From Macrostomum lignano (taxonomy: Eukaryota): a stretch of 64,000 bases of DNA. Both the position numbers and the translations under genes were made by a program. Numbering within the stretch: position 1 is the first letter of the stretch; each line of letters begins with the position of its first letter. Shown here one piece after another: positions 1,729-62,389 of this stretch. The notes under the pieces are model-generated. The model was not told the origin of the DNA. It saw nothing but the letters and a program-made list of their open reading frames with translations, and searched no databases. The DNA is taken from NCBI GenBank assembly GCA_002269645.1, contig NIVC01001307.1, forward strand, positions 1-64,000. Direction: 5' to 3'.

Positions 1729-1939
1729 AAATAAATAAATAAAGATTTGCAGCAGGGCTGCAGGCACCCTGGCGCTACGCCTTCGGCGACATGGTTCCAC
1801 AACCAGCGCTGACGGCAATCCTGCCCGTTCCGCTGCCTCCTGAATACTGTACACAGGCATGCACTCGTGTACACGCTCACACAGGGTGTACAGCGGCCCT
1901 GACTGTCTAGTCTCTGTGCCTTGGGAGTCTGTCTCTGAC

Positions 1940-2020
<81 letters not shown>

Positions 2021-2023
2021 GCC

Positions 2024-2068
<45 letters not shown>

Positions 2069-2071
2069 GCC

Positions 2072-2144
<73 letters not shown>

Positions 2145-2264
2145 TCGAATCGCACGCCAACCTCTAGGCCAATTTTCATGCACACAAACCCAAATAAATG
2201 TGACCGCGAACGGAATCGAACCTGGGGTCGCGGCGCGAGAGTCACGCTTTTACCGCTCGTCGAG
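1729..2264 (-). mobile_element. tRNA-derived SINE with internal (GACA)n tract
   Basis: Minus-strand tRNA-like head with B box GGTTCGATTCC (2222-2212), then GCGGTCACATTTATTTGGG, then (GACA)n, then core GGGCCGCTGTACACCCTGTGTGAGC and a (TTTA)n tail. The core and the post-head motif recur at 42361, 46294-46450 and 51968-52290. Confidence 0.75.
1940..2143. repeat. (GTCT)n microsatellite
   Basis: Directly visible tetranucleotide array. Confidence 0.98.
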
Positions 2265-4049
2265 TTTTTTCAAGAAATATTCAGCCCTATTAATCATATT
2301 TCATAATTATGTTAAAAGTAAAACATTAGGGACGGAGAACAATCGAGCAAACAGGTCTTCTGTTTGACAGCAATTAGATTTGCTCCTAGTCAAAGCAATT
2401 GAGCCCATTCGTTTACTGTTCGAGAGGGCAGCCACCTCGCAATAGTGAGGTGCTCAGGTTGAGCAGAGCAAATAGAGAAATTAAAATGAAAATCCTGTTT
2501 AACAGCTCCCAATTCTCTTTGACCAACCCTTCGGGTCCGCCATTATCCGCGACGCCTTTCTCCTTCCTCTCTTGTTCTGCTCTCTGCTTTTAGAAGAGGG
2601 CCACAGCCACCAATTGGTCTGATTTTGTCCCGCTACGACAGGCACCGAAGTGCTTTTGCCGGCCACTCAAACCGGCCACTCAGCGCTAAGGCCCGCCCGC
2701 GCCATGTTTGCCTCCTGCTTTCGCTCGGACTAAAGGGTCACTCTTCTAATAGCAGAAGCAGCAAAAGCAGTTTAAGCATACAGAAGCCTCTTATACAATT
2801 CTGGTTTGGCGGGTTTTTGAAGCTTCGAGTGTATAAGTTCCATTGTTTAACGCATTGTACCTGGCTTTAATGAGCGTCTGCAGCGCAGTCAGGCACTCGG
2901 GCGGGGGGGGGTTCAACCGTGACCGGCGCGTTTAACCCGCAGGCGTTTGACTGTAAATGATTGCGCAATCAAGAGACTTAACAGTATATACACACACATA
3001 CGACTATAGGCATACATTCGCATAAGGTTTGCGCAAGCCCAAAGGCGGCCAAAGTTCCGCCCAGGTCTTGCATGCAATTAATTATCAGAGAGCATTTTAA
3101 GCCCGTGCGGAGGAGGAGGAGGACTGAGAGCTTGGAGTCCGATTACCATTGACGCCGGCAGCAGCTGGGATTTCTCCCATGTCTGCCCCCCCCCATCGAA
3201 AAGCTGACACTTCAATAACTTCGGGTACGCAGATTTCTAAAGCTTCAAAATAATATTGGAGAAAAGGAAAAAAATCTAGTAGCAGACATGCTTGGAAGAA
3301 TTATTGCTTGCTTGTCTGCTTTTAGTTGTAAAACACCTTAGAACCTTGAAAGTAAATTACATTCTCACACTGCCAGGTGCTTCTTGACAGAAAAGCAGAC
3401 ACCCATGCCCCACTGAGTGTGTGTCGATTCTTAGACAGTAAAGTTTCTGTCACAGCTGCTGCTGCTGCTGCTGCTTCCTCTCCACTATCTGGGTCACCGC
3501 ATGACCGGTCTGTGCTCAGAATTTGGAAACCATGTTTCTCCTCTGTGCTTGTCTGTCTGTCTGCCCCTGCCCTGCGCCCCTCCACTGGCCTTCTCTCGTC
3601 TCGTCTGGTCTCCTCTAATCTCTCCGCTCGTCGTTCGCTTCCGCATTTCCTTTTTAATCTTCTGCTTCGGGGAGTGGGGGTGGGCACCGAAAGCGAGCAG
3701 GCTGATTTCAGTTCAGTCTTTATCCCAAGGCACGGCACGCGCACACATTAATCACTTCCGATTGAATTGCTAATGAGGGGGGAGCCACGGAGGGCCCCAA
3801 ATCCTCCCATCTCTGCACCCTGAAACTCGCTCGATTTTATTGCTGTGGAACACTGGCTGGGCCAGGATCTCTAGGATAGCCCTAATCGACATTAAAAGCC
3901 GTCTTGCGCTGGCCTGAATGCCGTGCTTCCTTATCCAACAATGCTGGAGGTGATTCGTGAATTCACAATCTCGAATAGCCCCTAATTTACAAGCCCCGAA
4001 ATTAACGTTTGGAAAAAAAACATTAAAATCTCCGAGCTTCAGATTCTCC

Positions 4050-36487: not shown

Positions 36488-38217
<1,730 letters not shown>

Positions 38218-39170: not shown

Positions 39171-39498
39171 TTACCAGACCTCGTATAGCAGCAGAATTGG
39201 AGCCGTAAAAGTCTAGACAATGCATGAATAAGGGTATTATAACTTCTAGTCGGCCCTTTGACGTTTCAAGCCTCAAAGTAGTCCGTGTTCGTCGTGCTGA
39301 ACAATAAAAATATTGAATTTTGAGCTCCTTCCAGACTTTGCTAACCCTCCTTAAAATGCCTTACATGTAGGCGATAGCAGCTGCACGATACAGCGATATG
39401 TTTCGAGTGTGAAAAGGACACGAATCTGAGACATTTGGTAAAGTTGGACTAGTACACTCGCTCCCTTGAGGGGTCTGAATAAAGACATATTTCGTATT

Positions 39499-41940
39499 TC
39501 AGTGAGTGTTTGTGTCAGTATCTGTGTCAGCTAGTGCATATGTCAGTGAGTGTTTGTGTCAGTATCTGTGTCAGCTAGTGCATATGTCAGTGAGTGTTTG
39601 TGTCAGTATCTGTGTCAGCTAGTGCATATGTCAGTGAGTGTTTGTGTCAGTATCTGTGTCAGCTAGTGCATATGTCAATGAGTGTTTGTGTCAGTATCTG
39701 TGTCAGCTAGTGCATATTTCAGTGAGTGTTTGTGTCAGTATCTGTGTCAGCTAGTGCATATGTCAGTGAGTGTTTGTGTCAGTATCTGTGTCAGCTAGTG
39801 CATATGTCAGTGAGTGTTTGTGTCAGTATCTGTGTCAGCTAGTGCATATTTCAGTGAGTGTTTGTGTCAGTATCTGTGTCAGCTAGTGCATATGTCAGTG
39901 AGTGTTTGTGTCAGTATCTGTGTCAGCTAGTGCATATGTCAGTGAGTGTTTGTGTCAGTATCTGTGTCAGCTAGTGCATATGTCAGTGAGTGTTTGTGTC
40001 AGTATCTGTGTCAGCTTGTGCATATTTCAGTGAGTGTTTGTGTCAGTATCTGTGTCAGCTTGTGCATATGTCAGTGAGTGTTTGTGTCAGTATCTGTGTC
40101 AGCTTGTGCATATTTCAGTGAGTGTTTGTGTCAGTATCTGTGTCAGCTAGTGCATATGTCAGTGACTGTTTGTGTCAGTATCTGTGTCAGCTTGTGCATA
40201 TGTCAGTGAGTGTTTGTGTCAGTATCTGTGTCAGCTAGTGCATATTTCAGTGAGTGTTTGTGTCAGTATCTGTGTCAGCTAGTGCATATGTCAGTGAGTG
40301 TTTGTGTCAGTATCTGTGTCAGCTTGTGCATATGTCAGTGAGTGTTTGTGTCAGTATCTGTGTCAGCTAGTGCATATGTCAGTGAGTGTTTGTGTCAGTA
40401 TCTGTGTCAGCTTGTGCATATTTCAGTGAGTGTTTGTGTCAGTATCTGTGTCAGCTAGTGCATATGTCAGTGAGTGTTTGTGTCAGTATCTGTGTCAGCT
40501 AGTGCATATTTCAGTGAGTGTTTGTGTCAGTATCTGTGTCAGCTAGTGCATATGTCAGTGAGTGTTTGTGTCAGTATCTGTGTCAGCTAGTGCATATGTC
40601 AGTGAGTGTTTGTGTCAGTATCTGTGTCAGCTAGTGCATATGTCAGTGAGTGTTTGTGTCAGTATCTGTGTCAGCTTGTGCATATTTCAGTGAGTGTTTG
40701 TGTCAGTATCTGTGTCAGCTTGTGCATATGTCAGTGAGTGTTTGTGTCAGTATCTGTGTCAGCTTGTGCATATTTCAGTGAGTGTTTGTGTCAGTATCTG
40801 TGTCAGCTAGTGCATATGTCAGTGAGTGTTTGTGTCAGTATCTGTGTCAGCTTGTGCATGTCAGTGAGTGTTTGTGTCAGTATCTGTGTCAGCTTGTGCA
40901 TATTTCAGTGAGTGTTTGTGTCAGTATCTGTGTCAGCTAGTGCATATGTCAGTGAGTGTTTGTGTCAGTATCTGTGTCAGCTTGTGCATATTTCAGTGAG
41001 TGTTTGTGTCAGTATCTGTGTCAGCTAGTGCATATGTCAGTGAGTGTTTGTGTCAGTATCTGTGTCAGCTAGTGCATATGTCAGTGAGTGTTTGTGTCAG
41101 TATCTGTGTCAGCTAGTGCATATGTCAGTGAGTGTTTGTGTCAGTATCTGTGTCAGCTTGTGCATATTTCAGTGAGTGTTTGTGTCAGTATCTGTGTCAG
41201 CTAGTGCATATGTCAGTGAGTGTTTGTGTCAGTATCTGTGTCAGCTAGTGCATATGTCAGTGAGTGTTTGTGTCAGTATCTGTGTCAGCTTGTGCATATT
41301 TCAGTGAGTGTTTGTGTCAGTATCTGTGTCAGCTAGTGCATATGTCAGTGAGTGTTTGTGTCAGTATCTGTGTCAGCTTGTGCATATTTCAGTGAGTGTT
41401 TGTGTCAGTATCTGTGTCAGCTAGTGCATATGTCAGTGAGTGTTTGTGTCAGTATCTGTGTCAGCTAGTGCATATGTCAGTGAGTGTTTGTGTCAGTATC
41501 TGTGTCAGCTTGTGCATATTTCAGTGAGTGTTTGTGTCAGTATCTGTGTCAGCTTGTGCATATTTCAGTGAGTGTTTGTGTCAGTATCTGTGTCAGCTAG
41601 TGCATATGTCAGTGAGTGTTTGTGTCAGTATCTGTGTCAGCTAGTGCATATGTCAGTGAGTGTTTGTGTCAGTATCTGTGTCAGCTTGTGCATATTTCAG
41701 TGAGTGTTTGTGTCAGTATCTGTGTCAGCTTGTGCATATTTCAGTGAGTGTTTGTGTCAGTATCTGTGTCAGCTTGTGCATATTTCAGTGAGTGTTTGTG
41801 TCAGTATCTGTGTCAGCTTGTGCATATTTCAGTGAGTGTTTGTGTCAGTATCTGTGTCAGCTAGTGCATATGTCAGTGAGTGTTTGTGTCAGTATCTGTG
41901 TCAGCTATAGTGCATATGTCAGTGAGTGTTTGTGTCAGCT
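39499..41940. repeat. 44-bp minisatellite (TCAGTGAGTGTTTGTGTCAGTATCTGTGTCAGCTAGTGCATATG), ~55 copies
   Basis: Period 44 (39499, 39543 and onward); nearly homogeneous. Confidence 0.98.
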
Positions 41941-42020: not shown

Positions 42021-43745
42021 ATGACAACCAATCTCAGCGTCAATGGCAGCAATGCGTCGGTATCCATGGAGGACGTCCAGCAAAAGTACATGGGCACGTT
42101 GACCTATCCAATTTTGCAAGCGTTCCTCGCCTACAGTATGCCAATTGTGGTCCTACTAGGCCTCTTTGGTGAGTGAAAATTGCAACATAATTTGCTTTCC
42201 ACCTACTATCAGTAGCGTTCGTTAACTTGTTTTTTTTCACACTATTGCTACTAAAGTCTATAATGTTTCGTCATCGACGCTAGATAAAAAAGTTAGTGCA
42301 AATCCTTTTTGTAAAAAAAGTAATTTTGATTTCGTAAAGTAATTTGATGCCTGACGATTAGACAGTCAGGGCCGCTGTACACTCTGTGTGAGCGTGTGCA
42401 TGAGTGCCGTGCCTGAGTACAGTACTGGCGCGCTTGTGTGTGCTCAGGAGTCAGCCGGATGGGCAGAATTGCCTCAGCGGATGATGTCGCCGAAGGCGTT
42501 TCGCCAGGTTGTTTACAACCTAAAGTAAATTGAAGTTACTTTCTATGAATTTGCAAATAAATTGTCCCACCGGACATTTTCCCGACTAATTTTCTCTTAG
42601 GCAACTTCGTAGCATTCGTGTTGCTCAAAAACTCGGCACTGCGCAGCACTGCTCATTTCTACCTGTGCGCCCTGACCGTGTGCGACTCACTCACCCTGCT
42701 CAGCATGCTGAGCTCCATCTGGGTCGGAGCAGTGCTCGAGGGTCATTTGCATCAGATGGGCTGGCAGGTCGACTGGCTGCAGGCCGGAACCCGCCAGATC
42801 AGCCTGTGCCGCGCCCGCCTCTACGCCACTTTCGTCTGTCGGACTGTCAGCACCTGGACGGTGGCCGTGTTCTCCTGGGAGCGCTGCCTGGCCGTCTGGC
42901 GCCCAATGCGCTTCGAAGGCGCCGCGGTAGGCTGGCGCTCCGGCCTGGTGCTACTCGGCCTGGTGGCCACTGCAGCGGCCGTCAACTCTTACGTCATCCC
43001 GGGTCTCCAGCCCAACGACGCCGGCCTCTGCCGAGCCAACCGGCTGTTCCGCATTGGCCGCAACGTCTCCTTGCTGATGCAGTCGCTGGCGCCCTGGCTT
43101 CTGGTGCTCGTCAGCAACTGCCTCATCGTTTGCACTCTGCGCAGAGGGCGGGCGGCCGCCTCGGCTGCCACCACTGCCGCCGCCGCCGCAGTCACCACCA
43201 CCGCCACCGCGGCTTCTCCGGGCAGCAGCGAGGAGGCTGTGCTGATGCGCACTCTCCAGCCACATCGTCAACGGCACCGCAGGCACCAGCGTGGCTTCAC
43301 CTACCGTCTGGTAGCCGTCTCCTTCGCTTTCTTGGTGAACACCTCGCTGCTGACCGTGTGCACCGTGTGGACAACAGTCGCTGAGCTGATTGAGCCTGAC
43401 AGCCAAACGGAGCGGAATCTCCTTCGCGACACCTTCTGGCTGATCAGCTTTCTGCCGTTTACAGCGAATTTCGCGTCTACCTGCCCGCTCTACTGCTTGG
43501 CTGGGCGGAAGTTCCGGCGCGCGGCCCGGCTGCTGGTCACCTGCCGGCTGCAGCAGATGCGCCTCGCCCGCCAACTGCTGGATCCAAGCCGGCCGACGTC
43601 CGGCCTGCGGGCCACCGCGGTGACCAACGCGAGTGCAAGACCGCGTTCAGATTCGAGCCAGACCGCGGCAGAAAGTCGGAGGCGTCAGCAGCAGCAGACG
43701 GCGTCACAGTCGAGAGGGTACGGTCAATTGACAATGCGTTCTTAA
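42021..43745 (+). CDS. Class A (rhodopsin-like) GPCR, probable peptide receptor, 2 exons
   Basis: Exons 42021-42168 and 42601-43745 (phase 1, GTGAGT/TTAG). N-terminal N-glycosylation sites, TM1 GN, TM2 LTVCD, TM3 SWERCLAVWRP, TM7 NFASTCPLYCLAGRKFR. Confidence 0.9.
42361..42510 (+). mobile_element. SINE 3' half in the GPCR intron
   Basis: GACAGTCAGGGCCGCTGTACACTCTGTGTGAGC...ATGTCGCCGAAGGCG...CGCCAGG matches the reverse complement of 1770-1910. Confidence 0.75.
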
Positions 43746-45994: not shown

Positions 45995-48900
45995 TCAAAA
46001 CGTCTGCGACGAATTGCCTGGGCTGGTCGACTCTCCGACCCGCCGCTGCGGCTCGGCCTCGTCCGCCTCGTCTCTGTCGGCCATGATCTGGTCCTCCTGA
46101 CAGGCGGCAGCAATAGCGGCGGCCCGCTCGGTGCCAACTAGGCCGGCCGCCATCTGCAGAGTGGCCTGGGCCGACGTTGTCCGCTGAAATCCGCGGCCGC
46201 TAAGCGCCGTCTCGTTGCTAGTAGATTTGGCTGTGGGAGCCGCCGCAGCGTCCAGCTTGCCCTGCAGTCCGGCCACCGCTTCCGCCCACCTGTAGTAATA
46301 ATAATAATAAACTTTTACAACAATAATAATAGGCAATTCTGCCCATTGCACTGCTCACACAGGGTGTACAGTTGACCCTCATGGCCCCAAATGAATGTGG
46401 CCGCGCTCGGAATCGAACCAGGGTCCTACGCGTCTACCGTTGAGCCCTCTGCCCACCTGTCCGGACAGTCTAGCATCCGTTCTCGGACGTCCGGACACTG
46501 AGAGCTGGCCTCTACTAGCAGTTTAACGCAGCGATAGGCCCGTCTGGGGTCGAGCTGAGCGCCGGAGCTGATCAAGCCGAGTAGGCCGCCGTCGGACACG
46601 ACGGTGTCGTCGACATTTTCAACGCCGTAGAGCAGCAGACGGAGCCGGTCGGACTGCAGCTGGTCGCGAATCAGGAACAGCTCCTTTATCAGGTCTAGCA
46701 GCGGTCTCAGCTCGTTAACAGCCGTGTGAGCCAGCTGGGATAGCAGTGCGGTAGTCATATTGCGCGAGGCTATTAGATTAGCATTGCAGGCGTGCCGCAG
46801 CAGGCCGCTCATCGCTGGCAGGAGGCCGGCAGAATCGGCGCACACGGCGGCGCACAGCTGGCCAAGTAGGGCGGCGCTCCGATCCGAGTCGCTTAGCAAC
46901 CAGCGTTCCATACTAGGCGACAGGCGTAGCAGAGTCTGCTGCTGTTGCTGCTGGGCGAAACTGCAATAAGTTGGCAGGGCGCACAGTAGGCGATACAGCG
47001 GAGCCAATTCTCGATAGCTGGGCGCGCTCAACGGCTTGAGACTGTCCGGCTGTTCTGGAAACAGAAACTCGGCCAGACGGCCGAATGCATCCCGGCTGTA
47101 CAGCACCGAGCAGGCGCGCAGTCGGTGCTCGTCAACGAAGCCGCAGAGCAGTTGAAAGAAGGCGCCGCACTGGCCCAGATGGCTGGCCGCGGTGCCCAAC
47201 TGATGGAGCAGGTGATCCACGAACTGCTGCAGCTGCGGAGCGCCGATTTGATTGGCGCGAACTTGAAGGTCAAGCGACTCGCCTGCGGAGCGGAGGGAGG
47301 TTTAGGGGCGGTTTTTAGGTTTTAGGGGTAATTTTTGAGGTTTTAGGGACGATTTTTAGGACGCTTTAGGGCGATTTTTTAATTTTAGTGACGGTTTATA
47401 GGAAGCTTAATGGGCGATTTTAGTGAGGTTTTCAGGGGCGATTTTTAGTAAGGTTTTCATGGGCGATTTTTAGTAAGGTTTAGGAGCGACTTTTAGTGAG
47501 GCTTAGGGGCGATTGTTAGTTACATTTATAGGCGATATTTAGTGAGGTTTAAGGGCGATTTTTAGTGATATTTTAGGGGCGACTCTGAGGATGATATTGG
47601 GCTATTCAAAGGGCATGTTAGGAGCAATTGTAAATCAGTTCAATAACAGTCTGTCCCACCTAGAAGCCTGGCTACAGTTTTCCTCTGCTCAGGCATCGGG
47701 CACACGATGAGATGCTCAGCCAGGTGTCCGGCCTGGCAAAAGAAATCCAAGAAAGCGGCATTAGCCTGGGCCGGGCTGGCAGTGAGCAGGCGCATCAACA
47801 GCCGGTCCCAGGCGGCGTTCAGTTGCGGTGGCTGGCGCAAGCGCTTCTCGGTGCGCAGGAACACCTCGAATAGGAACATCATCAGCAGGCCGGCGGCTTG
47901 CTCGGCCAGCTCCGAGTTCGACGAAGACGCCGCCGCGGCAGCCAAGGGAGCCGACGTGGCCGGCGACGCTGACAGAGTGAAAACTCCGGCTCCGCCCGAC
48001 GCCGAAGCGGACGGAGACGAGGCGGCAACGGCAGCTGAAGCAACAGACGATGAGGCGGCCGATTGAACCTGCTGCTGCTCTGAGCTGGGCGGAGCTGCTC
48101 GATCCAGCACGGACTCGCACAGCCGGTGGATGAAGGTAAAATGAGCCTCATTAAGCAGGTCAGTCTGCCGATAGAAGGTGAGATTGGACTCTCTCACTGC
48201 GGCGGCAATGTGCGCCGGCATAGCGTCGGAGAACAGGCCGCGCTGTTCGCCTCGCTGCACCAGGGCGCTCAACTCGGCGATGCTGTCCCGCTGATGACGA
48301 AAGCTGCTGCCGCCGCCGCTGCGCCTGTTTATCGGCGTCTTCTGCTGCTGCTTCGGCATCGGCGGCGGCGGCGGCGGCGACGCCGGATCTTCTAGTAGAA
48401 GCGGCTGAGTGCCACCGCTGGACTGCTGTTGAGACGACTGCGACGGGCTGTCCCGTTCGTAAAACAGCATATAGGCGCTCCAGTACCGCTTGCGCTCCTC
48501 CGGCAGAAAGTTCTCCGTGCTCTGGAAGGTGCCGCCGAAGGCTTCGGATTCCAGCAGCTGGTCGGTGAGGTCGATCTGCTCAATGGTCTGGTCGTTCATC
48601 TTGAACCAGGCGTCCGGCTTGTCTGCAGGCGGGATTGAAACTGAATGGATTATCTAGGGGAATTAATTACTTATAGGTTTATCACTAAACAACAGTAATC
48701 CTCATGAGTGAACGATTTAGACATCCATAATGGAAACTACTTATCAATAATCCAAATAAATCAGTTACTGATGATAATCAGACGGATTATTAACTACTCC
48801 TACAATACAGATGGATTAACTACTCATCAAATATAACCCAGATGGATTAACTACTCTTCGATAATCCAGATGAATTAACTGCTCCTCGATTATCTAGAAG

Positions 48901-51843
48901 GATTAACTACTCATCGATAATCTAGATGGATTAACTACTTATCGATAATCCAGAAGGATTAACTACTCATCGATAATCTAGATGGATTAACTACTACTCG
49001 ATAATCCAGATGGATTAACTACTTATCGATAATCTAGATGGATTAACTACAACTCGATAATCCAGATGGATTAACTAATCGATAATCCAGGATTAACTAC
49101 TTATCGATAATCCAGAAGGATTAACTACTCATCGATAATCTAGATGGATTAACTACTACTCGATAATCCAGATGGATTAACTACTTATCGATAATCTAGA
49201 TGGATTAACTACAACTCGATAATCCAGATGGATTAACTAATCGATAATCCAGGATTAACTACTTATCGATAATCCAGAAGGATTAACTACTCATCGATAA
49301 TCTAGATGGATTAACTACTCATCGATAATCTAGATGGATTAACTACTAATCGATAATCTAGATGGATTAACTACTTATCGATAATCCAGAAGGATTAACT
49401 ACTCATCGATAATCTAGATGGATTAACTACTCATCGATAATCTAGATGGATTAACTACTCATCGATAATCTAGATGGATAACCTACAACTCGATAATCCA
49501 GATGGATTAACTAACCTATCGATAATCTAGATGGATTAACTACTAATCGATAATCTAGATGGATTAACTTCTCATCGATAATCCAGATGGATTAACTACT
49601 TATCGATAATCCAGATGGATTAACTACTTATCGATAATCCAGAAGGATTAACTACTAATCGAAAATCCAGATGGATTAACTACTAATCGAAAATCCAGAT
49701 GGATTAACTACTCATCGATAACCCAGATGGATTAACTAATTAACCAGTTATCTGGGTGGACAAATTACTACTTATGGTTAACACAATTGGATTAACTATA
49801 TTTATCGATAATCTTATTGAAAAAATTAGCCCAACTCACCGGGCCGACGCTCCCGAACTAGGCTATAATAATGCCCAGCGCTGGCCTTGCCAGAATGAAT
49901 AACAACACCAACTAAATTGTAGTTAGATGGCTGCTGCTGCTCCTGCATCTCCTGCTCTTTCTGCTGCTGCTGTTGCGGCCCGTCTGAGGCGCTGTCGCCG
50001 CTCGACGCGCCAGCAGCGCTAGCCATAAAAGGCCCCAATTCCACTCGCCTAGGAAAGCTAAAATATAAATCGGATTTCAGCGGCTGGCCGCGCAGCCAAT
50101 CGTAGTCGAATCGTTTCAAATGAAAGCACAGCACCGGAGGCAGGCTGGCTATTCTAGTTCGCCTGAGCGCTGTGACCTTCCGATTGCCGCAGCGTTCGCA
50201 CGAATAGGCGTTATCAGCTTGCATCGTTTCTCCGCGTACAAAAGCGTGCAGAGCGGCTTCCAGACTGCCGGATTGAACTGGCAGATGCAGGCCGTAGAAA
50301 TCTTCTTCAAGTTCGCAACGATGCTCGCACTGTTCGCTCTCGATCAGGTGCTTGAATCGGCCGCGAAAGAAGGCGCTTAGTAGGGGGCGCTTAGCCTGCT
50401 CGTCTGTTTGGTCAATCAGCGCCTGTTGGGTTGTTGGGGGTTCGGGACGATTAGCGAAGATAGGAGCGATTCTTGTGGGGCTATGGAGGCGATTCTTGTG
50501 GGGCTATGGAGGCGATTCTTGTGGGGCTATGGAGGCGATTCTTGTGGGGCTATGGAGGCGATTCTTGTGGGGCTATGGAGGCGATTCTTGTGGGGCTATG
50601 GAGGCGATTCTTGTGGGGCTATGGAGGCGATTCTTGTGGGGCTATGGAGGCGATTCTTGTGGGGCTATGGAGGCGATTCTTGTGGGGCTATGGAGGCAAT
50701 TCTTGTGGGGCTATGGAGGCGATTCTTGTGGGGCTATGGAGGCGATTCTTGTGGGGCTATGCAGGGCGATTCTTGTGGGACTATGGAGGTGATTCTTGTG
50801 GGGCTATGGAGGCGATTCTTGTGGGGCTATGGAGGCGATTCTTGTGGGGCTATGGAGGCGATTCTTGTGGGGCTATGCAGGGCGATTCTTGTGGGGCTAT
50901 GGAGGCGATTCTTGTGGGGCTATGGAGGCGATTCTTGTGGGGCTATGGAGGCGATTCTTGTGGGGCTATGGAGGCAATTCTTGTGGGGCTATGGAGGCGA
51001 TTCTTGTAGGGCTATGGAGGCAATTCTTGTGGGGCTATGGAGGCGATTCTTGTGGGGCTATGTAGGTGCAGCATATTTAAAGGCGATTCGCAAGGATATA
51101 CCTGAAAGAACGCGAACGCGTCCTGCTGCTCTCTCGGATTGACTTTCTCGCCCCACAGTGAGAAATTGGCCCACAATTGATCTGGCACGTAGTACTGCTG
51201 CTGCAGCTCCAACAGGTGCGCCAGCACCAGCTGCAGCTGGTAGAGGGCACCGTCGCCCGACTCGCTGCTGCCTCCGCCGTCAACGGAGCTGCCAGAGGCG
51301 GCGGTAGCGACAGTCGTTGCCGCCGTCGCAGTGTTCTGCTCGTCGCCAGCAGTCGCAGTAGGATCCGGCGTTGACAGTACAGCAGCTGCCAGGCCTGGCA
51401 CCATAAACAGCTGTTGCAGCACCGAATTCATATAGCAGGTGGCACCGCCATTTTTTAGGCCAACTAAACCGCATTGACCGCGCGGTTCGGGCGGCGCCGG
51501 CACCTCCCAGCCGTGGATTCGGTGCAGCGGCCGCAGGGCCAAGCTAAGCGCTCGAAGGCATCGGCAATTGCTGGCGCACAGCTGCAATAGCAGGTCGTAG
51601 ATGGCTGGCCGGGACAGTGGCCCGGCACGGCAGTGCGAGTCGGCCGGCATCAGGAAGGCGCCAATCAGCTGAGGCAGCAGCCGCTCGCCGGCCGAAGGGT
51701 CGGGCGGATCCGCCTGCCAGGCCGCTGCCAGCAGGCGCAGGTGACCGGCTAGCAGGGCGTCCTCCTCCTGCTGGCACTGGCAGGCCGCTGTCTGGCTTAG
51801 CTGAAAACCGGTTAGCCAGTCCTGCTCCACGCTGGCTACTCGC
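45995..51843 (-). CDS. USP24: USP24-like (USP9/24/34 group) ubiquitin carboxyl-terminal hydrolase, 3' five exons
   Basis: Exons 51843-51102, 50422-49840, 48622-47660, 47282-46457 and 46289-45995 splice in frame. Cys box GLKNGGATCYMNSVLQQLF, QQDAFAFF, His box HSGKASAGHYYSLVR, WFKMND, YWSAYMLFYER, DPRRAYRCVK and C-terminal SNET...FQRTTSAQ. The N-terminal exons are not in the window. Confidence 0.85.
46294..46450 (-). mobile_element. tRNA-derived SINE forming an entire USP24 intron
   Basis: B box GGTTCGATTCC, core CTGTACACCCTGTGTGAGC and (TAT)n tail; flanked by the 10-bp direct repeat GCCCACCTGT at 46284-46293 and 46451-46460. Confidence 0.85.
48830..49760. repeat. ~28-bp intronic minisatellite (GATGGATTAACTACTCATCGATAATCCA)
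   Basis: Tandem variable copies. Confidence 0.93.
50468..51060. repeat. 23-bp intronic minisatellite (GCGATTCTTGTGGGGCTATGGAG)
   Basis: About 25 copies. Confidence 0.95.
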
Positions 51844-51967
51844 CTGAGTGAGTAGTGCAGTTGGGGCGCGAGTTTAGATAATGAGAAAGAAAAAATAAAA
51901 AGCAAAATGAAATAAACAGTCCGACAGACAAACAGGCATACAAACAGGAGGACAGACACACAGTTTA

Positions 51968-52290
51968 AGGGGAGCCCAGCGGTCTAGCGCGGCGCTCTGA
52001 TGTGCCAGCTGCCCAGGCTAGATTTCAAGTGCAGTCACATTAATTTGGGGCTAAATTGGAACCTCGACTTGGGTTTTTCTCGTGAAATTAACGGCCTTGA
52101 GGCCAAATCCCCAAAGCACAGTGAAGTGTACATGAATAACGATAAATAAAGTTGGGGCCGCTGTACACTCCTGTGTGAGTGTGTGCCTGTGCATATGACT
52201 GCGTACGAGTCTGTGGAATGGGCAGTAATGCCTCTCGCCGGTTGTGTGACAATGTCGCCTAAATTGCGCCGGGGTGTACACAGCCCCTGC
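51968..52290 (+). mobile_element. tRNA-derived SINE, followed by a (GACA)n-type tract (52300-52496)
   Basis: Degenerate tRNA-like head, GCAGTCACATTAATTTGGGG and core GGGGCCGCTGTACACTCCTGTGTGAG. Confidence 0.65.
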
Positions 52291-52385
52291 GTCTAAGAAA
52301 AAAAGACACACAGACAAGACACACAGACAGACACACATACACTAAGACAGGCAGACAGACAGACAGAAAAAAAGACACACAGACA

Positions 52386-52765: not shown

Positions 52766-52822
52766 ACTCTATAACCCCTTGCCCGCGCCGCAGGCGCGAA
52801 GGGTCTTTTTCTGTTACTAAAA

Positions 52823-53137
52823 ATGACCCGAGTTTACACCTTTTCTGTTAGTGATACTTTTGAGACTGTTGCTAAAAATGCAGAGATAATAAAACAACAT
52901 ATTTTGAATGGAATAATTGATGAAGTTTATTTAAAATATGACGACAAGCACGACCTAAAACTTTATCCATTAGAGCTAGATGAGATGTATGATTTAGAAC
53001 AAGAGGGTGAGTTAATATTTCAACTTGGAGATTATTTAAATTCGGATGATTGGGAGGTTAGATCAACAGATTCCGAATCAACAAATAGTTCATATGAAAC
53101 CAGTGATTCAGAGAATGAAAGTGAAATTTTTATGTGA
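52823..53137 (+). CDS. Hypothetical acidic viral protein (104 aa)
   Basis: ORF with TAAAAATG start and an acidic S/E/D tail; no motif recognised. Confidence 0.6.
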   Translation: MTRVYTFSVSDTFETVAKNAEIIKQHILNGIIDEVYLKYDDKHDLKLYPLELDEMYDLEQEGELIFQLGDYLNSDDWEVRSTDSESTNSSYETSDSENESEIFM

Positions 53138-53153
53138 AAAAAATATTTAAAAA

Positions 53154-53378
53154 ATGAACTATTATTCTATAACAGAAACGACATTTATTGTGAAAAATAT
53201 ATATAAAAAAATGAAGGTAAACTATTCCTACATCGGAAATGTTCCAATTAATGAACTTAATGAAAATTTAAGTTTGATAACAGTTGAACAAATGTCAATA
53301 ATAATATTAGTAACAATTATAGTAATAATATTGTTTTTGTTTGTAATAAAAAATTTACTACCATGTTGTCTTAAGTAA
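53154..53378 (+). CDS. Small viral membrane protein (74 aa)
   Basis: C-terminal hydrophobic helix IIILVTIIVIILFLFVI followed by PCCLK. Confidence 0.6.
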   Translation: MNYYSITETTFIVKNIYKKMKVNYSYIGNVPINELNENLSLITVEQMSIIILVTIIVIILFLFVIKNLLPCCLK

Positions 53379-53388
53379 CTGTTTGAAC

Positions 53389-54991
53389 TTAGTTCGCAGA
53401 CATTATCTGGTTCTCATAAAAAGAACCCAATATTTCTTCACCGTCCTTATCAGCAATTATATAGGTTGTAGGATTGGTATTTAAAACTTTACTGATAGTA
53501 AATTTCTCACTTATCTTCCAATATCCTTTTCTTCCTTTTTCAAACTTATCTTTCCATTTATAGATATAAACAGAATCACCAACCTTAAAAGATTTCTTTT
53601 TATTTTTTTCAAATTTTCCAAAAGTAACTTTAACTTTTTCAGGATTGTTATAAGCTTGTTGAGGAGTCATCTTTATAGCTGAATGATATGAATTGTTATA
53701 ATCTTTCACTACGTCTGGTAATATTTTTACCCACTTTTGGTTACCATTAAGACTAAACTGAAACCATAATTTCTTACCTAAAGTTCGATTAAATCTTTCT
53801 ATTAATGCGTTTTTACTCTCTCCATAAATAGAATAAATTTTATTAATATACTCCCCATTCGCGTCTTTTTTCCTTTCTTTTCCTTTTTCAAAATGATACA
53901 ATTTATACATATGAGGATTGTAAAATTCTTTTCCTTCATCAACACACAATCTTTCGCTTTTTTCTCCAAGACTTCTAAAAGCAGCAGCAACCTCCTCTCC
54001 CTTTTTGGATTTTAAAGGAACAGCCCACGCGTATCGAGTAAAACCATCTAATATGGTTAAGATATATTTATATCCTCTTTCGTTCGGCATCGACATTAAA
54101 TCAGCATACCAAATTTCATTCTTTTTGAAGTTCATGATTTTTCTATAAAATTTAGGTTTTCGATATTCTTTATGAAGAATCTTTGCCTCATCAGAACTTA
54201 ACCCACCACCACTTAATAATAAACACTCGACACAATTATTTCCATGTTGATTATAATTAATTCCCAAACCAAATTTAACTTTAGACTGCAAAATCTTTTT
54301 AACCATCCACCTAGTTAATCTTTGCCCTACCGATAATCCCTGCAAGTTATCTAATCCTTGAATCATTTTTTGATCGGCTTCATGTTTTAATCTTAATGCT
54401 TCCTCGGGCGGGTTCTTGTCAGCATCTCTATATGCTAAGTCGTGATAGTATGCTAACCAATCAATCCCATTTATTGGAATTGAATCAGATTTTGGAGTAT
54501 TGTCAGGATTTAATCGGAGATCGAGTCGAGTCAACCCGGCCTTTATACCTTTGCTTTCACAAAGGAGTAGACTGTGTCTTAAGCTATCATAAGGATTGAC
54601 TAAGTCCTTCAAGCCCACCAGCGTACAGTCGTTGCATCTCAACCATACTCAAGTCATATGAGGTTAGGTTTTCGATTCACTCTTGCCCATATATTTATCT
54701 TCAAGCTTGTTACCGTTGGGAAGAGGAGTTACCTCTGTTCCTTTGTAATCTTTCGAAAACAAAGTGGTACTTGAAGCTTTAGGGGATTGAGTGAGCGGCT
54801 GGTGTTGCCACTAATAGTGACTAGCAGTAGCTTTGCATCTACCACTCGGGCACAGCTCGAGCTCCACCCGCGAAGTTGTAAGATGGGATGTGTAATTCAT
54901 TTGTATACCTCCCAGTAGTAAAGATTGGTGGTAAGCTTGTTAATCCTTTTTGAACATCTAACAATCCTCCATCAAACACAAGTTGGTTCAT
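53389..54991 (-). CDS. PLA2 (parvovirus VP1u-like) - retroviral-type integrase fusion, 425 aa after group I intron removal
   Basis: Exon 1 54991-54866 encodes MNQLVFDGGLLDVQKGLTSLPPIFTTGRYTNELHIPSYNFAG. Exon 2 54540-53389 encodes AGLTRLDLRL...PINGIDWLAYYHDLAY...ADQKM (PLA2), then the DDE core WYADL / LCVDEGKEF / IERFNRTL and an SH3-like C-terminus FKVGDSV. The ORF-track start at 54642 lies inside the intron. Confidence 0.9.
54541..54865 (-). ncRNA. Group I self-splicing intron (IC1-like, 325 nt, no internal ORF)
   Basis: 5' exon ends in U and the intron ends in G. Helices: P1 CGGGU/GCCCG, P3 CACCAGC/GCUGGUG, P4 UCACUC/GAGUGA, P5a CUUCAAG/CUUGAAG with A-rich bulge, P5b with GAAA loop, P5c AGAGG/CCUCU, P6 AUC/GAU, P7 GACUGU/ACAGUC, J8/7 AAGAC, P9 CCUUUG/CAAAGG with GAAA loop. 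Excision restores the frame. Confidence 0.92.
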
Positions 54992-55475
54992 TTTTAATGT
55001 TTAAAAAACATGTTTCTATCAATTTAATAATTTCTAAATATTGATCACCATATAAAAAATTTAAAGCAAATTCCCCAGTTAACAAGGTAACTCCATTATC
55101 AAATACTTTTTGTACGGGGTTTTTAGTAGTATTATTAATGCAAATATAATATAAATCAAATTCGGGATTAACATATTTAAATTCTAATAACTTTTGAATA
55201 TTTCTAAATCGACTTGATGAATTATCTGTGTTATCAGAAGATTTTAACTCTAACGCAACTTTTCTTTCTGTATGAATTAAATCAATTTTATTTACTTTTT
55301 CAAAACCAAAATGTTTAATAGCTAATAATTCATAAAGATATCCAAGTCTCATTTGAATTGTTTTAATACGGTTTGCAATTATTAATTCATCTTGAAATAT
55401 CTTATTTAGTATTCTGTCAGAACCAGCCTTATCATAAATAGGTTTACAAAGACAATCTTTTATCGTATTATCCAT
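54972..55475 (-). CDS. PD-(D/E)XK endonuclease, Eco47II-like restriction-enzyme fold (167 aa)
   Basis: KTIQMRLGYLYE helix followed by IDL...ALELKSSDNTDNSSS (D...ExK). The family assignment is from recalled motif resemblance only. Confidence 0.6.
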   Translation of the reverse strand: MDNTIKDCLCKPIYDKAGSDRILNKIFQDELIIANRIKTIQMRLGYLYELLAIKHFGFEKVNKIDLIHTERKVALELKSSDNTDNSSSRFRNIQKLLEFKYVNPEFDLYYICINNTTKNPVQKVFDNGVTLLTGEFALNFLYGDQYLEIIKLIETCFLNIKNEPTCV

Positions 55476-55498
55476 TTTATAAAAAATAAATTTAACAA

Positions 55499-56176
55499 TT
55501 AAACACCTGTATGTCCAGCAGCTTTCGCAGCAGCTAAAACAAGTTTTCGCGGGGTTTTAAATCCATCACCAACAGCTGGTTTGTTATTTATAGAATTTAC
55601 AATCCATTTATACAAGCTGGTATTTTTAACAGCTCCTCCTAACTCATTATAAAAAATTTTAGCACTTACTAATTCATCCTTAGTATATAAATCCGGGTTA
55701 AATTTTACCCTAGGGTTCATAATAATATTATATGCTCCACCCAATTCTGTATATAGTTCATTTCGATCTTTATCAACGTTACCAATTCGATAATTATTAT
55801 TACCTAAATCTGTAACAGCAATACTAGGTGGTACTCTTGGAAATTGTTGCCGATCAACTCCACCCCTAATCTCTTCAGCCCTAATCTCTATAACTCTCAA
55901 TTGTGCTTGAGCAACACCATAAGCAGGCGGCTCATCATCCAAAATTTCATCCTCTTTTGGCTCAGTATTTTTAGCAATTTTTTCCAGAAGATCTTTATCT
56001 GTTTTTTCTAGTTCACTAATTTTCCCAGTAATAGGATTAACAAAAGGAGCAGCAAATCTTTCGCCAGCTAATTGTATTCCTAACTTTCTTTTTTGTAAAT
56101 TTCTAACAAAATCAGAATATCTTTGCTTCTCTTTATAAATCGCTAACTCTCCATCAACGTCCATAAATTGACTCAT
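55499..56176 (-). CDS. Polinton-type hypothetical protein (225 aa)
   Basis: Divergent from the MCP gene; PFVNPIT and C-terminal LVLAAAKAAGHTG resemble a conserved Polinton accessory/core protein (weak recall). Confidence 0.55.
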   Translation of the reverse strand: MSQFMDVDGELAIYKEKQRYSDFVRNLQKRKLGIQLAGERFAAPFVNPITGKISELEKTDKDLLEKIAKNTEPKEDEILDDEPPAYGVAQAQLRVIEIRAEEIRGGVDRQQFPRVPPSIAVTDLGNNNYRIGNVDKDRNELYTELGGAYNIIMNPRVKFNPDLYTKDELVSAKIFYNELGGAVKNTSLYKWIVNSINNKPAVGDGFKTPRKLVLAAAKAAGHTGV

Positions 56177-56210
56177 TTTTTAACATAAAAAACTTTTTTA
56201 ACTTAAAAAA

Positions 56211-57683
56211 ATGGCTGAAACAAAAACTATGTGGAGTGATAAATTTCATTTCAAAAAGCACCGACAGTATATTAATGAGGTCAGAGCAAGAGATTTAAAT
56301 TATACCCTACCAACAAGTGATAATTCAAATAACTTTACTACTGGAACGGTAACTTTTGACATCGGCGCAACCAACACTATATTGGATATGAAAAATGCGT
56401 TTTTCCGCGTTAGATGGTTGTATACTAGAAATGATGGAACTGCTCTTGCAGCCGGAGATATCGCAGATCGATCCAGAATAATAATAGAAAATGATTGGTT
56501 TTATAAATGTTTTTCCCAAGCTCAACTAACTGTTAATGGTGCTGAGGTTGAGACATCATCAAACCCCGCAGAGATTAATGGAGTTTTGAAACATTTAAAT
56601 TATACTTATTTATCAAAACAAGTTGGTGATAATGTTGGGTGGATGCCGGATAAAGGTAACGGGCAAGCAGTAGTTTTCCCTAATGTACAAAACGCAGCCG
56701 GTGCAGATACTGCAGCGCTAATTGTTTACCTTAATACAAACATAGTTCCAGTTGTAACCACTATGACTAATACAAAAGATATTAATACTGGTTTTATAGA
56801 TCGTCAGAATAAATTCCCAGTCGCGGTTTTAACCACAGCAACAGCATATGAGCAGGACTTTTCAATCTTTCCACTATTTGGGTTTTTCTCACCAAATCGG
56901 GTATGGAAAGGATTAAAATTTGGGATACAGTTGCAAATATCTGGTGGATATCAGCCTAGGATACTTTATGGAACCTCAATTTCAACCGATATAGCAGTTC
57001 GTATAGATTCAATTCAATTAGTCGTACCAACTATTGAGGTAACAGCCCCACTTTTAAAACACATCGATAATCAGTTAACGCATGATCAGGAAATATTTTA
57101 TTTGAATCGTCGACATTTTATGCGAACCATTAATAATAACCAGGATTCATTCCAGTGGCAAATACTGACATCAAAACGTCGGGTGAGATATATTTTTGTT
57201 TGGTTTAAGATAACAAATAGAAGGAGTAAAAGAGCAAATGGGGATTTATATTGGCTTCAATCCGGTGCCATAGCAGAACAAGCAGCCACCGCAACAGACA
57301 ATGCGGCTGCAGCTATTAACGAGTTTAATGTTCAGAATATCCGCCTGCAGGTTGATGATCAATATTATCCGGTTAAAGACCCCCTAAATTTAAATATAGC
57401 AAATAATAATGTTAATGATTTTATAAAATATTATCAAGATTATGCTAAAAATGAAGCGTATGCCGTCCCTCAGTACACACCCACAGAGTTTCTAAACATT
57501 CATCCAGTGGTTGTTTATGATCTAACGGCACAGAAAGAAAACGTAGCCAATATTGGACTTAATTATATGTTAGAGATTAATAAAACCGGTAATCAGGCAC
57601 TTGACGCCCACGTATTGTTTCTAGAGGAATATATGTCAATTGCTAAAGCTGATGGCACGATTGTTCGGGACGCACCATTGTAA
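56211..57683 (+). CDS. Major capsid protein (double jelly-roll, 490 aa)
   Basis: Size, beta-rich composition and Polinton MCP-like motifs VTFDI, ENDWFYKCFSQAQLTVNGAEVE, VRYIFVWF, VQNIRLQVDDQYYP and VVVYDLTAQ; position next to the ATPase and penton genes. Confidence 0.85.
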   Translation: MAETKTMWSDKFHFKKHRQYINEVRARDLNYTLPTSDNSNNFTTGTVTFDIGATNTILDMKNAFFRVRWLYTRNDGTALAAGDIADRSRIIIENDWFYKCFSQAQLTVNGAEVETSSNPAEINGVLKHLNYTYLSKQVGDNVGWMPDKGNGQAVVFPNVQNAAGADTAALIVYLNTNIVPVVTTMTNTKDINTGFIDRQNKFPVAVLTTATAYEQDFSIFPLFGFFSPNRVWKGLKFGIQLQISGGYQPRILYGTSISTDIAVRIDSIQLVVPTIEVTAPLLKHIDNQLTHDQEIFYLNRRHFMRTINNNQDSFQWQILTSKRRVRYIFVWFKITNRRSKRANGDLYWLQSGAIAEQAATATDNAAAAINEFNVQNIRLQVDDQYYPVKDPLNLNIANNNVNDFIKYYQDYAKNEAYAVPQYTPTEFLNIHPVVVYDLTAQKENVANIGLNYMLEINKTGNQALDAHVLFLEEYMSIAKADGTIVRDAPL

Positions 57684-57734
57684 AATGAGTGCAGGTCTCC
57701 GACCGTCGCGCCTATTTAAATTATTTCTTTAAAA

Positions 57735-58525
57735 ATGGTAAAGGCAAAACACGATAAGATATTTCCAAATGATCCTTTTCTTTGTTTAGTAATTGGTGGG
57801 TCGGGTAAAGGAAAAACACACTTTGTTTATGACCTGTTAACAACCGATGGAATGCTAGACTATAATAATTTAATAATTTATACTAAAAAACCTAGAATAA
57901 AATATTATGAATTTCTTAAAGATGGATTAAAAAACAAATTAAAAAAAGATGTCTTGTTTAGAATGTTAAGAGCATATGAGCAATATGAGGATGATGACGA
58001 ACCGCGATTTAATCTAGCAGACATTGAGGATTTATGTAAAACAATGGCACAACAGCCAGAAAACATCACCGATCGCCCGAAGGGTCGCGGACTTCGTCCG
58101 ATCGAGCCCCAACTGTTAGAGTATCAACCCGATTAGCCTATGATCAAATTCCAAAACATGATAAAACACTAATTATTTTTGATGATTGTATTAATGACGG
58201 TGATCAAGAATTGCAAAAGGAAATTTTTGTTAGTGGTAGAGGAGATGGAATTGGAGCTTTTTATCTTACTCAATCCTTTAGAGAATTAGAATCGATTATA
58301 AAAAAGAATGCTAGCTGTTGTGTAATGTTTGATTTAGATAACTATGATCTACAAAATATTCACGCTAGATTTAATCCCGGATTGGATGCAAAACCATTTA
58401 AAAGTATGTGTAAAAAAATTTGGGATGATAGCCAATACAAACATATTTATATCAATCCGAGGTTAGAAAGGAAAAATCGAATCTTAAAAGATCTTATAAA
58501 AGAAGACGATGAGGAAGAAGAATGA
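57735..58525 (+). pseudogene. A32/FtsK-type DNA packaging ATPase, frameshifted
   Basis: Walker A GGSGKGKT in 57735-58136; Walker B LIIFDDC, GR and TQS in the -1 frame up to 58525. Removing the 29 nt between CGATCG copies (58070, 58099) restores the frame. Confidence 0.88.
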
Positions 58526-58576
58526 TCGCCCCATAGGGTCGCGTACCTTCGGTACGATTAATTTCCCACTATAAAA

Positions 58577-59362: not shown

Positions 59363-59372
59363 TACTGTAAAA

Positions 59373-59552: not shown

Positions 59553-59553
59553 A

Positions 59554-59988: not shown

Positions 59989-59998
59989 ACAGTAAAAA

Positions 59999-62377: not shown

Positions 62378-62389
62378 AAATAGACGAGA

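What the first reader, a model, noticed from the sequence alone, without database searches (positions are those of the whole stretch)
46284..46460. Spliceosomal intron created by a SINE insertion whose TSD duplicates an AG|GT protosplice site
Seen: the last USP24 intron (46456-46290, 167 nt) equals a 157-bp SINE plus one copy of a perfect 10-bp direct repeat (minus strand ACAG|GTGGGC). The first copy supplies the GT donor and the second the AG acceptor, so splicing restores ...PD-R-WAEAV exactly, matching the USP24 frame. The SINE (TAT)n tail lies just before the acceptor. Established: TSD-based intron gain is known for Introner-type DNA transposons; clean retroposon cases in coding exons are rare. 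Inference: a recent SINE-mediated intron gain in a conserved gene.
Basis: partly seen in the sequence, partly recalled or inferred. Interest (0 to 1): 0.8.

Follow-up and report, generated by a model that had tools for sequence, protein, structure and literature searches.

The report
SINE insertion forming a candidate new intron
A 157-bp SINE-like mobile element sits inside a conserved coding exon of a USP24 deubiquitinase gene, and the 10-bp duplication made on insertion carries AG|GT, so ordinary splicing could remove it exactly; this is a clean animal example of a known route to new introns, but no RNA evidence for splicing could be obtained.

Summary
ACAGGTGGGC (minus strand) occurs twice in the window, at 46451-46460 and 46284-46293, flanking 157 bp. 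Removing 46456-46290 (167 nt, GT..AG) gives a 1136-codon open frame.

The junction (..CPD-R-WAEAV..) aligns without a gap to 14 USP24 orthologues. All invariant residues downstream of it are kept.

The insert belongs to a dispersed repeat family with three other copies in the window. It has a perfect pol III B box, no terminal inverted repeats and a (TTA/TAT)n tail. It is best called a SINE-like retroposon, although no tRNA model recognises its head.

A coral, a coral-like scaffold, a spider and one unidentified eukaryote all have uninterrupted coding sequence at this position. So the interruption is lineage-specific.

Only 1.0% of possible 10-bp target sites in this coding sequence contain AGGT. 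The splice signals match the consensus about as well as those of the three neighbouring introns. Both points favour a spliced, tolerated insertion.

No transcript, empty-site allele or source genome could be reached. An unspliced, truncating, possibly polymorphic insertion therefore remains a live rival.

The mechanism has precedents: the rice CatA SINE intron, introners, and AGGT duplication. I rate it a new member of a known kind, with moderate interest.

The parts
46451..46460 (-). Target-site duplication, upstream copy (ACAG|GTGGGC). ACAG is the last 4 nt of exon D; GTGGGC is the predicted 5' splice site.
   Evidence: Exact 10-mer with only two occurrences in the window. Donor CAG|GTGGGC matches 7 of 9 positions of MAG|GTRAGT.
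46294..46450 (-). 157-bp SINE-like retroposon, in sense orientation to the gene. A-box-like GGGCTCAACGG 46447-46437; B box GGTTCGATTCC 46419-46409; family blocks CACATTCATTTGGGG 46399-46385, CTGTACACCCTGTGTGAGC 46371-46353 and GGGCAGAATTGCC 46344-46332; simple-repeat (TTA/TAT)n tail 46331-46294.
   Evidence: Shares these blocks with three other copies in the window. No terminal inverted repeat. Not called as tRNA.
46284..46293 (-). Target-site duplication, downstream copy. Its ACAG supplies the predicted 3' splice site AG (46291-46290); GTGGGC is the first 6 nt of exon E.
46290..46456 (-). Predicted new spliceosomal intron: 167 nt, GT..AG, phase 2, GC 0.48 between exons of GC 0.62 and 0.68.
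   Evidence: Removal restores a frame collinear with 14 orthologues. Splicing was not observed.
46457..47282 (-). USP24 exon D (826 nt), ending ..LDCPD + AG.
   Evidence: tblastn with orthologues P0124 and P0133, and splice-site mapping.
45995..46289 (-). USP24 exon E: the last 97 codons plus TGA. It encodes (R)WAEAVAGLQ...SNE...FQRTTSAQATL, the conserved C-terminal motif.
46426..46428 (-). In-frame TAG reached if the insert is retained. The protein would lose the last 97 residues.
51964..52303 (+). Related full-length family copy (340 bp) with an A-rich tail, flanked by the 10-bp repeat AGACACACAG (51954-51963 and 52304-52313). It lies just upstream of exon A.
   Evidence: The flanking repeat sits in (ACAG)n-like sequence, so it is weak evidence for a TSD.
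1765..2270 (-). Related family copy with an internal (CAGA)n expansion and a (TTTA)n tail.
42340..42560 (+). Related family copy, 5'-truncated (core and 3' modules only).

Best explanation
A short non-autonomous retroposon (SINE-like) inserted in sense orientation into what used to be one continuous terminal coding exon of USP24. It has a pol III B box, family-specific core blocks and a simple-repeat tail.

Insertion by target-primed reverse transcription duplicated 10 bp of the target, ACAGGTGGGC, which happened to contain AG|GT. The upstream copy now offers CAG|GTGGGC as a 5' splice site. The downstream copy offers ..ACAG|G as a 3' splice site. The element's own T/A-rich tail lies where a polypyrimidine tract and branch point are needed.

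The spliceosome can therefore remove exactly 'element plus one TSD copy' (167 nt) and regenerate the pre-insertion mRNA. The insertion would be nearly neutral and would persist as a new phase-2 intron.

Shown: the anatomy, the frame restoration, the collinearity with orthologues, the repeat-family membership, and the absence of an intron at this site in four distant orthologous loci.

Inferred: the retroposition mechanism, the actual splicing, and the recency.
For: 1. The 10-bp perfect flanking repeat is not chance.
2. The interval has no sequence other than the element plus one repeat copy, so no older intron is hidden there.
3. Removing it gives a 1136-codon open frame. It also gives a gapless alignment through the junction, keeping invariant W119, A122, L126, N143, F152, R154, T155, S157-Q159, T161 and L162 downstream.
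4. Only 5 AGGT sites occur in 3410 nt of this coding sequence, and only 1.0% of possible 10-bp targets contain one. An unselected insertion would rarely have this property; an insertion that survived because it is spliceable must have it.
5. The donor matches 7 of 9 consensus positions and the acceptor tract has 12 of 18 pyrimidines. The three neighbouring introns score 6-8 of 9 and 10-14 of 18; the adjacent intron uses TAG|GTGGGA.
6. Three other family copies are in the window, one also flanked by a 10-bp repeat and an A-rich tail. The insert has no inverted termini.
7. Coral L001 23478-23828, coral-like L005, spider L002 27584-27769 and Logan contig L003 all encode this stretch in one exon.
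8. Precedent: the rice CatA SINE intron (PMC2394776) and introners from non-LTR retrotransposons (PMC12130899).
Against: - There is no transcript evidence. The source organism is not in any searchable collection.
- The tRNA origin of the head is not supported by ARAGORN or Rfam. The A-B box spacing is unusually short at 17 nt.
- No partner LINE was identified. The only LINE-like fragment in the window ends in (GTAA)n, not (TTA)n.
- The other family copies are only about 77-87% identical to the insert in the shared blocks. The exact subfamily, its copy number and its activity are unknown.
- A perfect 10-bp TSD and an intact downstream frame are equally expected for a very young unspliced insertion.
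Confidence: 0.6

Rival explanations
1. The same SINE-like insertion, but not spliced or only inefficiently spliced. It would be a young, possibly heterozygous or strain-specific disruptive allele encoding USP24 truncated after ..DCPDRWAEGSTVDA, lacking the last 97 residues. The AG|GT in the TSD would be coincidence.
For: No RNA evidence for splicing could be obtained. The perfect TSD, the intact tail and the undecayed downstream frame fit a very recent event. A stop 28 nt into the insert would lie in the last exon, so the truncated mRNA could escape nonsense-mediated decay (inference).
Against: Only about 1% of possible 10-bp targets in this coding sequence contain AGGT. The splice signals match the consensus about as well as those of the accepted neighbouring introns. 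The lost segment carries 11 residues invariant across 15 sequences, so truncation is likely to be harmful.
Confidence: 0.27
2. A new intron created by repair of a staggered double-strand break, with a piece of SINE DNA or cDNA captured as filler, rather than by bona fide retroposition. This resembles the Daphnia new introns, which are flanked by short direct repeats.
For: Short direct repeats flanking new introns are also produced by break repair (recalled from Li et al. 2009, not checked here). The insert is a shortened version of the family: it lacks the anticodon-arm region and the 3' module of the longer copies.
Against: The insert begins within a few bases of where the full-length copy at 51964 begins. 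It ends in a simple-repeat tail, as a whole retroposed transcript would, not as a random fragment. A 10-bp TSD is typical of LINE-mediated insertion (established knowledge).
Confidence: 0.06
3. An old intron into which a SINE later inserted, or a DNA transposon (MITE or classical introner) rather than a retroposon.
For: TE insertions into existing introns are common, and most known introners are TIR DNA transposons (about 82%, PMC12130899).
Against: The interval contains nothing besides the element and one TSD copy. Four distant orthologous loci lack an intron here. The insert has no terminal inverted repeats; it has a B box, a simple-repeat tail and a 10-bp TSD.
Confidence: 0.04

Closest known systems
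Rice catalase CatA intron created by a p-SINE1-like insertion (Iwamoto et al. 1998, as cited in PMC2394776)
   Same: A SINE inserted into a coding region and became a spliceosomal intron of a conserved gene. The intron is absent from orthologues.
   Different: This case is in an animal-type gene, not a plant one. Here both splice-site dinucleotides lie in the two TSD copies, so the excised unit equals the element plus the TSD exactly. Splicing is documented for CatA and not here.
Introner elements (Micromonas, Aureococcus, fungi, dinoflagellates, copepods; PMC11282704, PMC9860276, PMC12130899)
   Same: TE insertion plus TSD yields a precisely spliceable intron. About 5% of classified introner families derive from non-LTR retrotransposons.
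   Different: Introners are defined as families of many near-identical introns in unrelated genes. They usually carry one splice site themselves and co-opt the TSD for the other. Here there is a single case, both sites come from the TSD, and the other family copies in the window are not introns.
Intron gain by tandem duplication of an AGGT-containing segment (Zhuo et al. 2007, cited in PMC2394776; potato RdRp case, PMC4974935)
   Same: A direct duplication containing AG|GT provides the donor from the first copy and the acceptor from the second. Splicing restores the original mRNA.
   Different: In those cases the intron body is duplicated exon sequence. Here the duplication is only the 10-bp TSD and the body is a mobile element.
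Alu 'intronization' in human last exons (PMC2394776)
   Same: A SINE inserted in a terminal exon gives rise to a new intron.
   Different: The human cases are in 3' UTRs, are alternatively spliced, and use splice sites created by mutations within the Alu. This one is in conserved coding sequence and uses TSD-borne sites.

Membership tests
SINE (short LINE-mobilised retroposon) | Short (<600 bp), non-coding, dispersed in multiple copies | tested here: met
   The insert is 157 bp. Three further related copies lie in the 64-kb window at 1765-2270, 42340-42560 and 51964-52303. The genome-wide copy number is unknown.
SINE (short LINE-mobilised retroposon) | Head derived from tRNA, 7SL or 5S with an internal pol III promoter (A and B boxes) | tested here: inconclusive
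   The B box GGTTCGATTCC matches 11 of 11. The A-box-like GGGCTCAACGG matches about 8 of 11, with only 17 nt between the boxes (consensus from established knowledge). ARAGORN finds no tRNA. Rfam in E-value mode finds no tRNA in this copy or in two others.
SINE (short LINE-mobilised retroposon) | A-rich or simple-repeat 3' tail and a flanking TSD of about 5-20 bp; no terminal inverted repeats | tested here: met
   A (TTA/TAT)n tail at 46331-46294, a perfect 10-bp TSD, and no inverted termini.
SINE (short LINE-mobilised retroposon) | A partner LINE sharing the 3' end or otherwise able to mobilise it | tested here: inconclusive
   The only LINE-like fragment in the window (RNase H ORF 14268-15191) ends in (GTAA)n, which does not match. 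The genome is not available.
U2-type spliceosomal intron | GT..AG boundaries with usable donor, acceptor and branch-site context | tested here: met
   Donor CAG|GTGGGC matches 7 of 9. Acceptor TATTATTATTATTACTACAG|G has 12 of 18 pyrimidines. A yTnAy candidate lies 18 nt upstream. These values are comparable with the three neighbouring introns.
U2-type spliceosomal intron | Removal yields the reading frame and sequence of the orthologous protein | tested here: met
   A 1136-codon ORF and a gapless alignment across the junction to 14 orthologues.
U2-type spliceosomal intron | Actually removed from the transcript | not testable with these tools
   No transcriptome or genome of the source organism could be reached.
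Introner family | Many near-identical copies, each constituting an intron in an unrelated gene | not testable with these tools
   Only one copy in the window forms an intron. The other three copies are divergent (about 77-87% identical in shared blocks) and are not exact introns. A genome-wide scan is needed.
Introner family | Splice sites supplied by the element and/or its TSD | tested here: met
   Both GT and AG lie in the TSD copies. The element supplies the T-rich tract.
AGGT tandem-duplication intron | Intron body consists of duplicated exon sequence | tested here: not met
   Only 10 bp are duplicated. The 157-bp body is a repeat-family member.
USP24 orthologue (host gene) | USP catalytic domain plus the USP24-type C-terminal region | tested here: met
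   Pfam UCH at 1e-13 and 1.2e-18. The best named hits are USP24 or USP9/24. The C-terminal motif aligns with 2450-2580-aa proteins, including a vertebrate-type USP24 C-terminus.

The most novel reading that the evidence does not exclude
This SINE family, or a young 157-bp subfamily of it, might act as a retroposon-type introner in an animal genome. It would repeatedly create new introns in coding exons wherever its roughly 10-bp TSD duplicates an AG|GT protosplice site, with the T/A-rich tail serving as a ready-made 3' splice-site context. The USP24 case would then be one of many recent gains in a lineage that has otherwise lost most ancestral introns of this gene.
Probability: 0.1. Interest if true: 0.8.

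Novelty: new member of a known kind. Interest (0 to 1): 0.5.

Why it matters
Recently gained introns whose origin can be read directly from the sequence are scarce in animals. A survey of 3,325 genomes found introners in only two animal groups (PMC9860276).

If splicing is confirmed, this locus would be a textbook-clean animal example. Any TE insertion can become an intron in one step when its target-site duplication copies an AG|GT protosplice site. It would link the TE-insertion model and the AGGT-duplication model of intron gain.

It would also show how an insertion into a conserved coding exon can be tolerated. By itself it is a single case of a known mechanism, so its value depends on transcript confirmation and on whether more such cases exist in the same genome.

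Tried and rejected
Searches that found nothing useful:
- A protein search with the spliced C-terminus found nothing; the candidate list was probably swamped by low-complexity words. The exhaustive representative search then found about 30%-identical orthologues, but no same-species sequence.
- Exact-sequence look-ups of four window ORFs and one tick hit were not on record. The source organism therefore stays unidentified. The best catalytic-domain hit is krill at 47% identity, which is too weak to name a taxon.
- A metagenome scan for the exon-D end, which would have picked up an empty site or a spliced cDNA, gave 0 hits.
- A metagenome scan for the SINE core gave 4 hits, all chance matches in bacterial-looking coding sequence.
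- The krill USP24 locus returned no DNA.
- The 490-aa ORF of the neighbouring virus-like element had no relative in IMG/VR or PDB, and its single-sequence AlphaFold model was unusable at pLDDT 29.5.

Ideas tested and dropped:
- A tRNA origin for the head. ARAGORN and Rfam do not call a tRNA in three family copies.
- Flanking repeats at the other three introns of the gene. None were found.
- A special RNA structure in the intron. The fold is not significant, z = -1.49.
- Conserved USP24-GPCR synteny with the coral-like scaffold. The two GPCRs are unrelated.
- The LINE-like fragment at 14268-15191 as the partner element. Its (GTAA)n tail does not match.

Full report
**1. Observation**

On the minus strand the sequence reads ...GACTGTCCGG ACAG|GTGGGC AGAGGGCTCAACGG ... 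TTATTATTATTACT ACAG|GTGGGC GGAAGCGG....

- The 10-mer ACAGGTGGGC occurs exactly twice in the 64-kb window, at 46451-46460 and 46284-46293. Chance expectation is 0.02.
- The repeat finder extends the repeat to 13 nt with one mismatch.
- The two copies flank 157 bp, 46294-46450.
- The interval 46456-46290 is 167 nt and runs from GT to AG.
- Reading through the insert gives ..LDCPDRWAEGSTVDA and then TAG at 46428-46426.
- Deleting the 167 nt gives ..LDCPD-R-WAEAVAGLQGKL.., which stays open for 97 more codons to TGA 45997-45995.

**2. The host gene**

- The minus-strand ORFs at 51.9-45.9 kb carry the Cys-box and His-box halves of a UCH/USP domain (Pfam PF00443, 1e-13 and 1.2e-18).
- Named relatives are USP24 or USP9/24 proteins from krill, bullfrog, a coral, spiders and ticks.
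- An exhaustive HMMER search with the spliced C-terminal 362 aa found 100 relatives. Among them are 2450-2580-aa proteins whose C-termini match across the junction.
- Mapping against two full-length orthologues, together with GT-AG boundaries, gives five exons in the window:
  - exon A, ending at 51102
  - exon B, 50422-49840
  - exon C, 48622-47660
  - exon D, 47282-46457
  - exon E, 46289-45995
- Joined together, the five exons form a single 1136-codon frame with no stop.

**3. Does exact removal make biological sense?**

In a 15-sequence alignment (A2), the stretch CPDVRERMLDCPD-R-WAEAVAGLQGKL aligns without any gap to, for example, CPVAKDYLVSIMA-K-WQWAIIWLKKKM.

- The residue after the junction codon is the invariant W119.
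- Downstream invariants A122, L126, N143, F152, R154, T155, S157, A158, Q159, T161 and L162 are all retained.

So the pre-insertion sequence was a normal USP24 C-terminus. Either the 97 downstream codons are still under selection, or the insertion is very young.

**4. What the insert is**

BLAST of the insert and of its relatives against the window finds three other copies of a related repeat: 1765-2270 (minus), 51964-52303 (plus) and 42340-42560 (plus, 5'-truncated). They share these blocks:

- a head with the pol III B box GGTTCGATTCC followed by CACATTNATTTGGGG
- a core, GGGYC..CTGTACACYCTGTGTGAGC
- the block GGGCAGAATTGCC

Further properties of the insert and its family:

- The intron copy is a short version. 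It lacks about 15 nt between the A and B boxes and lacks the 3' module of the longer copies.
- It ends in ATTATTATTGTTGTAAAAGTTTATTATTATTATTACT.
- The other copies end in (TTTA)n or A-rich tails.
- The copy at 51964-52303 is also flanked by a 10-bp repeat, though in microsatellite-like sequence.
- The insert has no terminal inverted repeats.
- ARAGORN and Rfam do not recognise a tRNA in any of the three heads tested. 'tRNA-derived' therefore remains an inference from the box motifs.
- The only LINE-like fragment in the window has a different tail.

Overall the element is best described as a SINE-like non-autonomous retroposon.

**5. Is the intron position old?**

The C-terminal motif was located in four distant genomic loci:

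- the coral Desmophyllum pertusum (L001 23478-23828)
- a coral-like TARA scaffold (L005)
- the spider Stegodyphus mimosarum (L002 27584-27769)
- an unidentified eukaryote from a Logan assembly (L003, a single 235-codon ORF)

In all four, the residues corresponding to ..D-R-W.. lie inside one exon.

The spider has introns 13 codons upstream (..SLSLK|CPLVKD..) and after ..SAQ|, but none at the junction itself.

In addition, the interval contains nothing except the element and one repeat copy, which leaves no room for an older intron.

**6. Context of the gene's introns**

Where the coral has at least 11 introns (our residues 99-595), this gene has 2.

- The B|C intron coincides with a coral intron within one codon.
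- The A|B intron lies 7 codons from the nearest coral intron.
- The D|E intron has no counterpart.
- None of the other three introns has flanking direct repeats.
- The A|B and B|C introns are largely minisatellite arrays.

**7. Can it be spliced?**

- The donor CAG|GTGGGC matches 7 of 9 consensus positions.
- The acceptor TATTATTATTATTACTACAG|G has 12 of 18 pyrimidines, with a yTnAy candidate 18 nt upstream.
- The three accepted introns of the gene score 6-8 of 9 and 10-14 of 18.
- The adjacent intron uses the very similar donor TAG|GTGGGA.
- The intron has GC 0.48 between exons of GC 0.62 and 0.68.
- The intron RNA has no significant structure (z = -1.49).

**8. Chance argument**

The 3410-nt coding sequence in the window has only 5 AGGT sites. 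Only 1.0% of possible 10-bp target sites contain one.

An unselected insertion would therefore rarely carry AG|GT in its TSD. An insertion that persisted because it can be spliced must carry it. This is the main reason for preferring the intron reading over a merely disruptive insertion. It is an inference, not an observation of splicing.

**9. What could not be done**

No transcript, intron-less allele or source genome was found. Splicing, fixation and age therefore remain untested.

**10. Comparison with known cases**

The mechanism combines two established ideas. The first is TE insertion yielding an intron with help from the TSD:

- introners (reviewed in PMC11282704)
- non-LTR retrotransposon-derived introner families, about 5% of those classified (PMC12130899)
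- the rice CatA SINE intron and Alu intronization (both in PMC2394776)

The second is duplication of an AGGT protosplice site (Zhuo et al. 2007, cited in PMC2394776; PMC4974935).

This case differs in three ways. Both splice dinucleotides come from the TSD. The body is a retroposon. The host is a conserved animal-type gene; introners were found in only two animal groups (PMC9860276).

It is not shown to be an introner family, because only one copy forms an intron here.

**11. Verdict**

- Best explanation: a SINE-like insertion converted into a new intron through AG|GT in its TSD (confidence about 0.6).
- Main rival: an unspliced young truncating allele (about 0.27).
- Novelty: a new member of a known kind.
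- Interest: 0.5.

Noticed in passing
window 52800-64000 (runs off the end of the window): An AT-rich block (GC about 0.33) of intact ORFs that looks like an integrated Polinton/Maverick-like or virophage-like element. It lies upstream of USP24 exon A, so it is probably inside a USP24 intron.
- rve integrase, 53389-54642(-) (Pfam 1.7e-7)
- A32/FtsK-like packaging ATPase split over 57735-58136 and 58211-58525
- 490-aa ORF, 56211-57683, and 261-aa ORF, 58577-59362, both without recognisable relatives
- fibre-like 540-aa ORF with NLKRNVADSYTKTEVD repeats, 59999-61621 (PHROG tail-fibre hits)
- Eco47II-like nuclease ORF, 54972-55475
No polymerase is seen within the window.
   Followed up: partly
window 50466-51066 and 48789-49738: Two USP24 introns (A|B and B|C) consist largely of minisatellite arrays: 23 bp x 26 copies and 28 bp x 34 copies.
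   Followed up: partly
whole window, e.g. 36479-38217, 39495-41938, 33019-34813, 12203-13573, 23070-23723: Tandem-repeat density is very high: 33 TRF rows at score 200 or above. Examples are (TAGA)x434, a 44-bp unit x55, a 14-bp unit x128 and a 21-bp unit x66. This may help identify the source taxon.
   Followed up: no
window 30179-31294 (+): An intact 371-aa mariner/Mos1-type transposase ORF (Pfam Transposase_1 5.6e-31, HTH_48 1.1e-19).
   Followed up: partly
window 14268-15191 (-), 3' end near 14170: An RNase H-containing C-terminal ORF of a non-LTR retrotransposon (Pfam RNase_H 6e-14), followed by a roughly 75-nt 3' UTR ending in (GTAA)n. It is not an obvious partner of the SINE family.
   Followed up: partly
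window 42618-43745 (+): An intron-less rhodopsin-type 7TM receptor ORF (Pfam 7tm_1 2.2e-9), convergent with USP24. A 5'-truncated SINE copy sits just upstream at 42340-42560. A coral-like scaffold (L005) also has a convergent GPCR after USP24, but the two receptors are unrelated.
   Followed up: yes
window 51845-45995 (-) versus L001: This USP24 has 2 introns over the catalytic region, where the coral orthologue has at least 11, and its exons are 583-963 nt long. This suggests extensive intron loss in this lineage. The A|B intron lies 7 codons from the nearest coral intron.
   Followed up: partly
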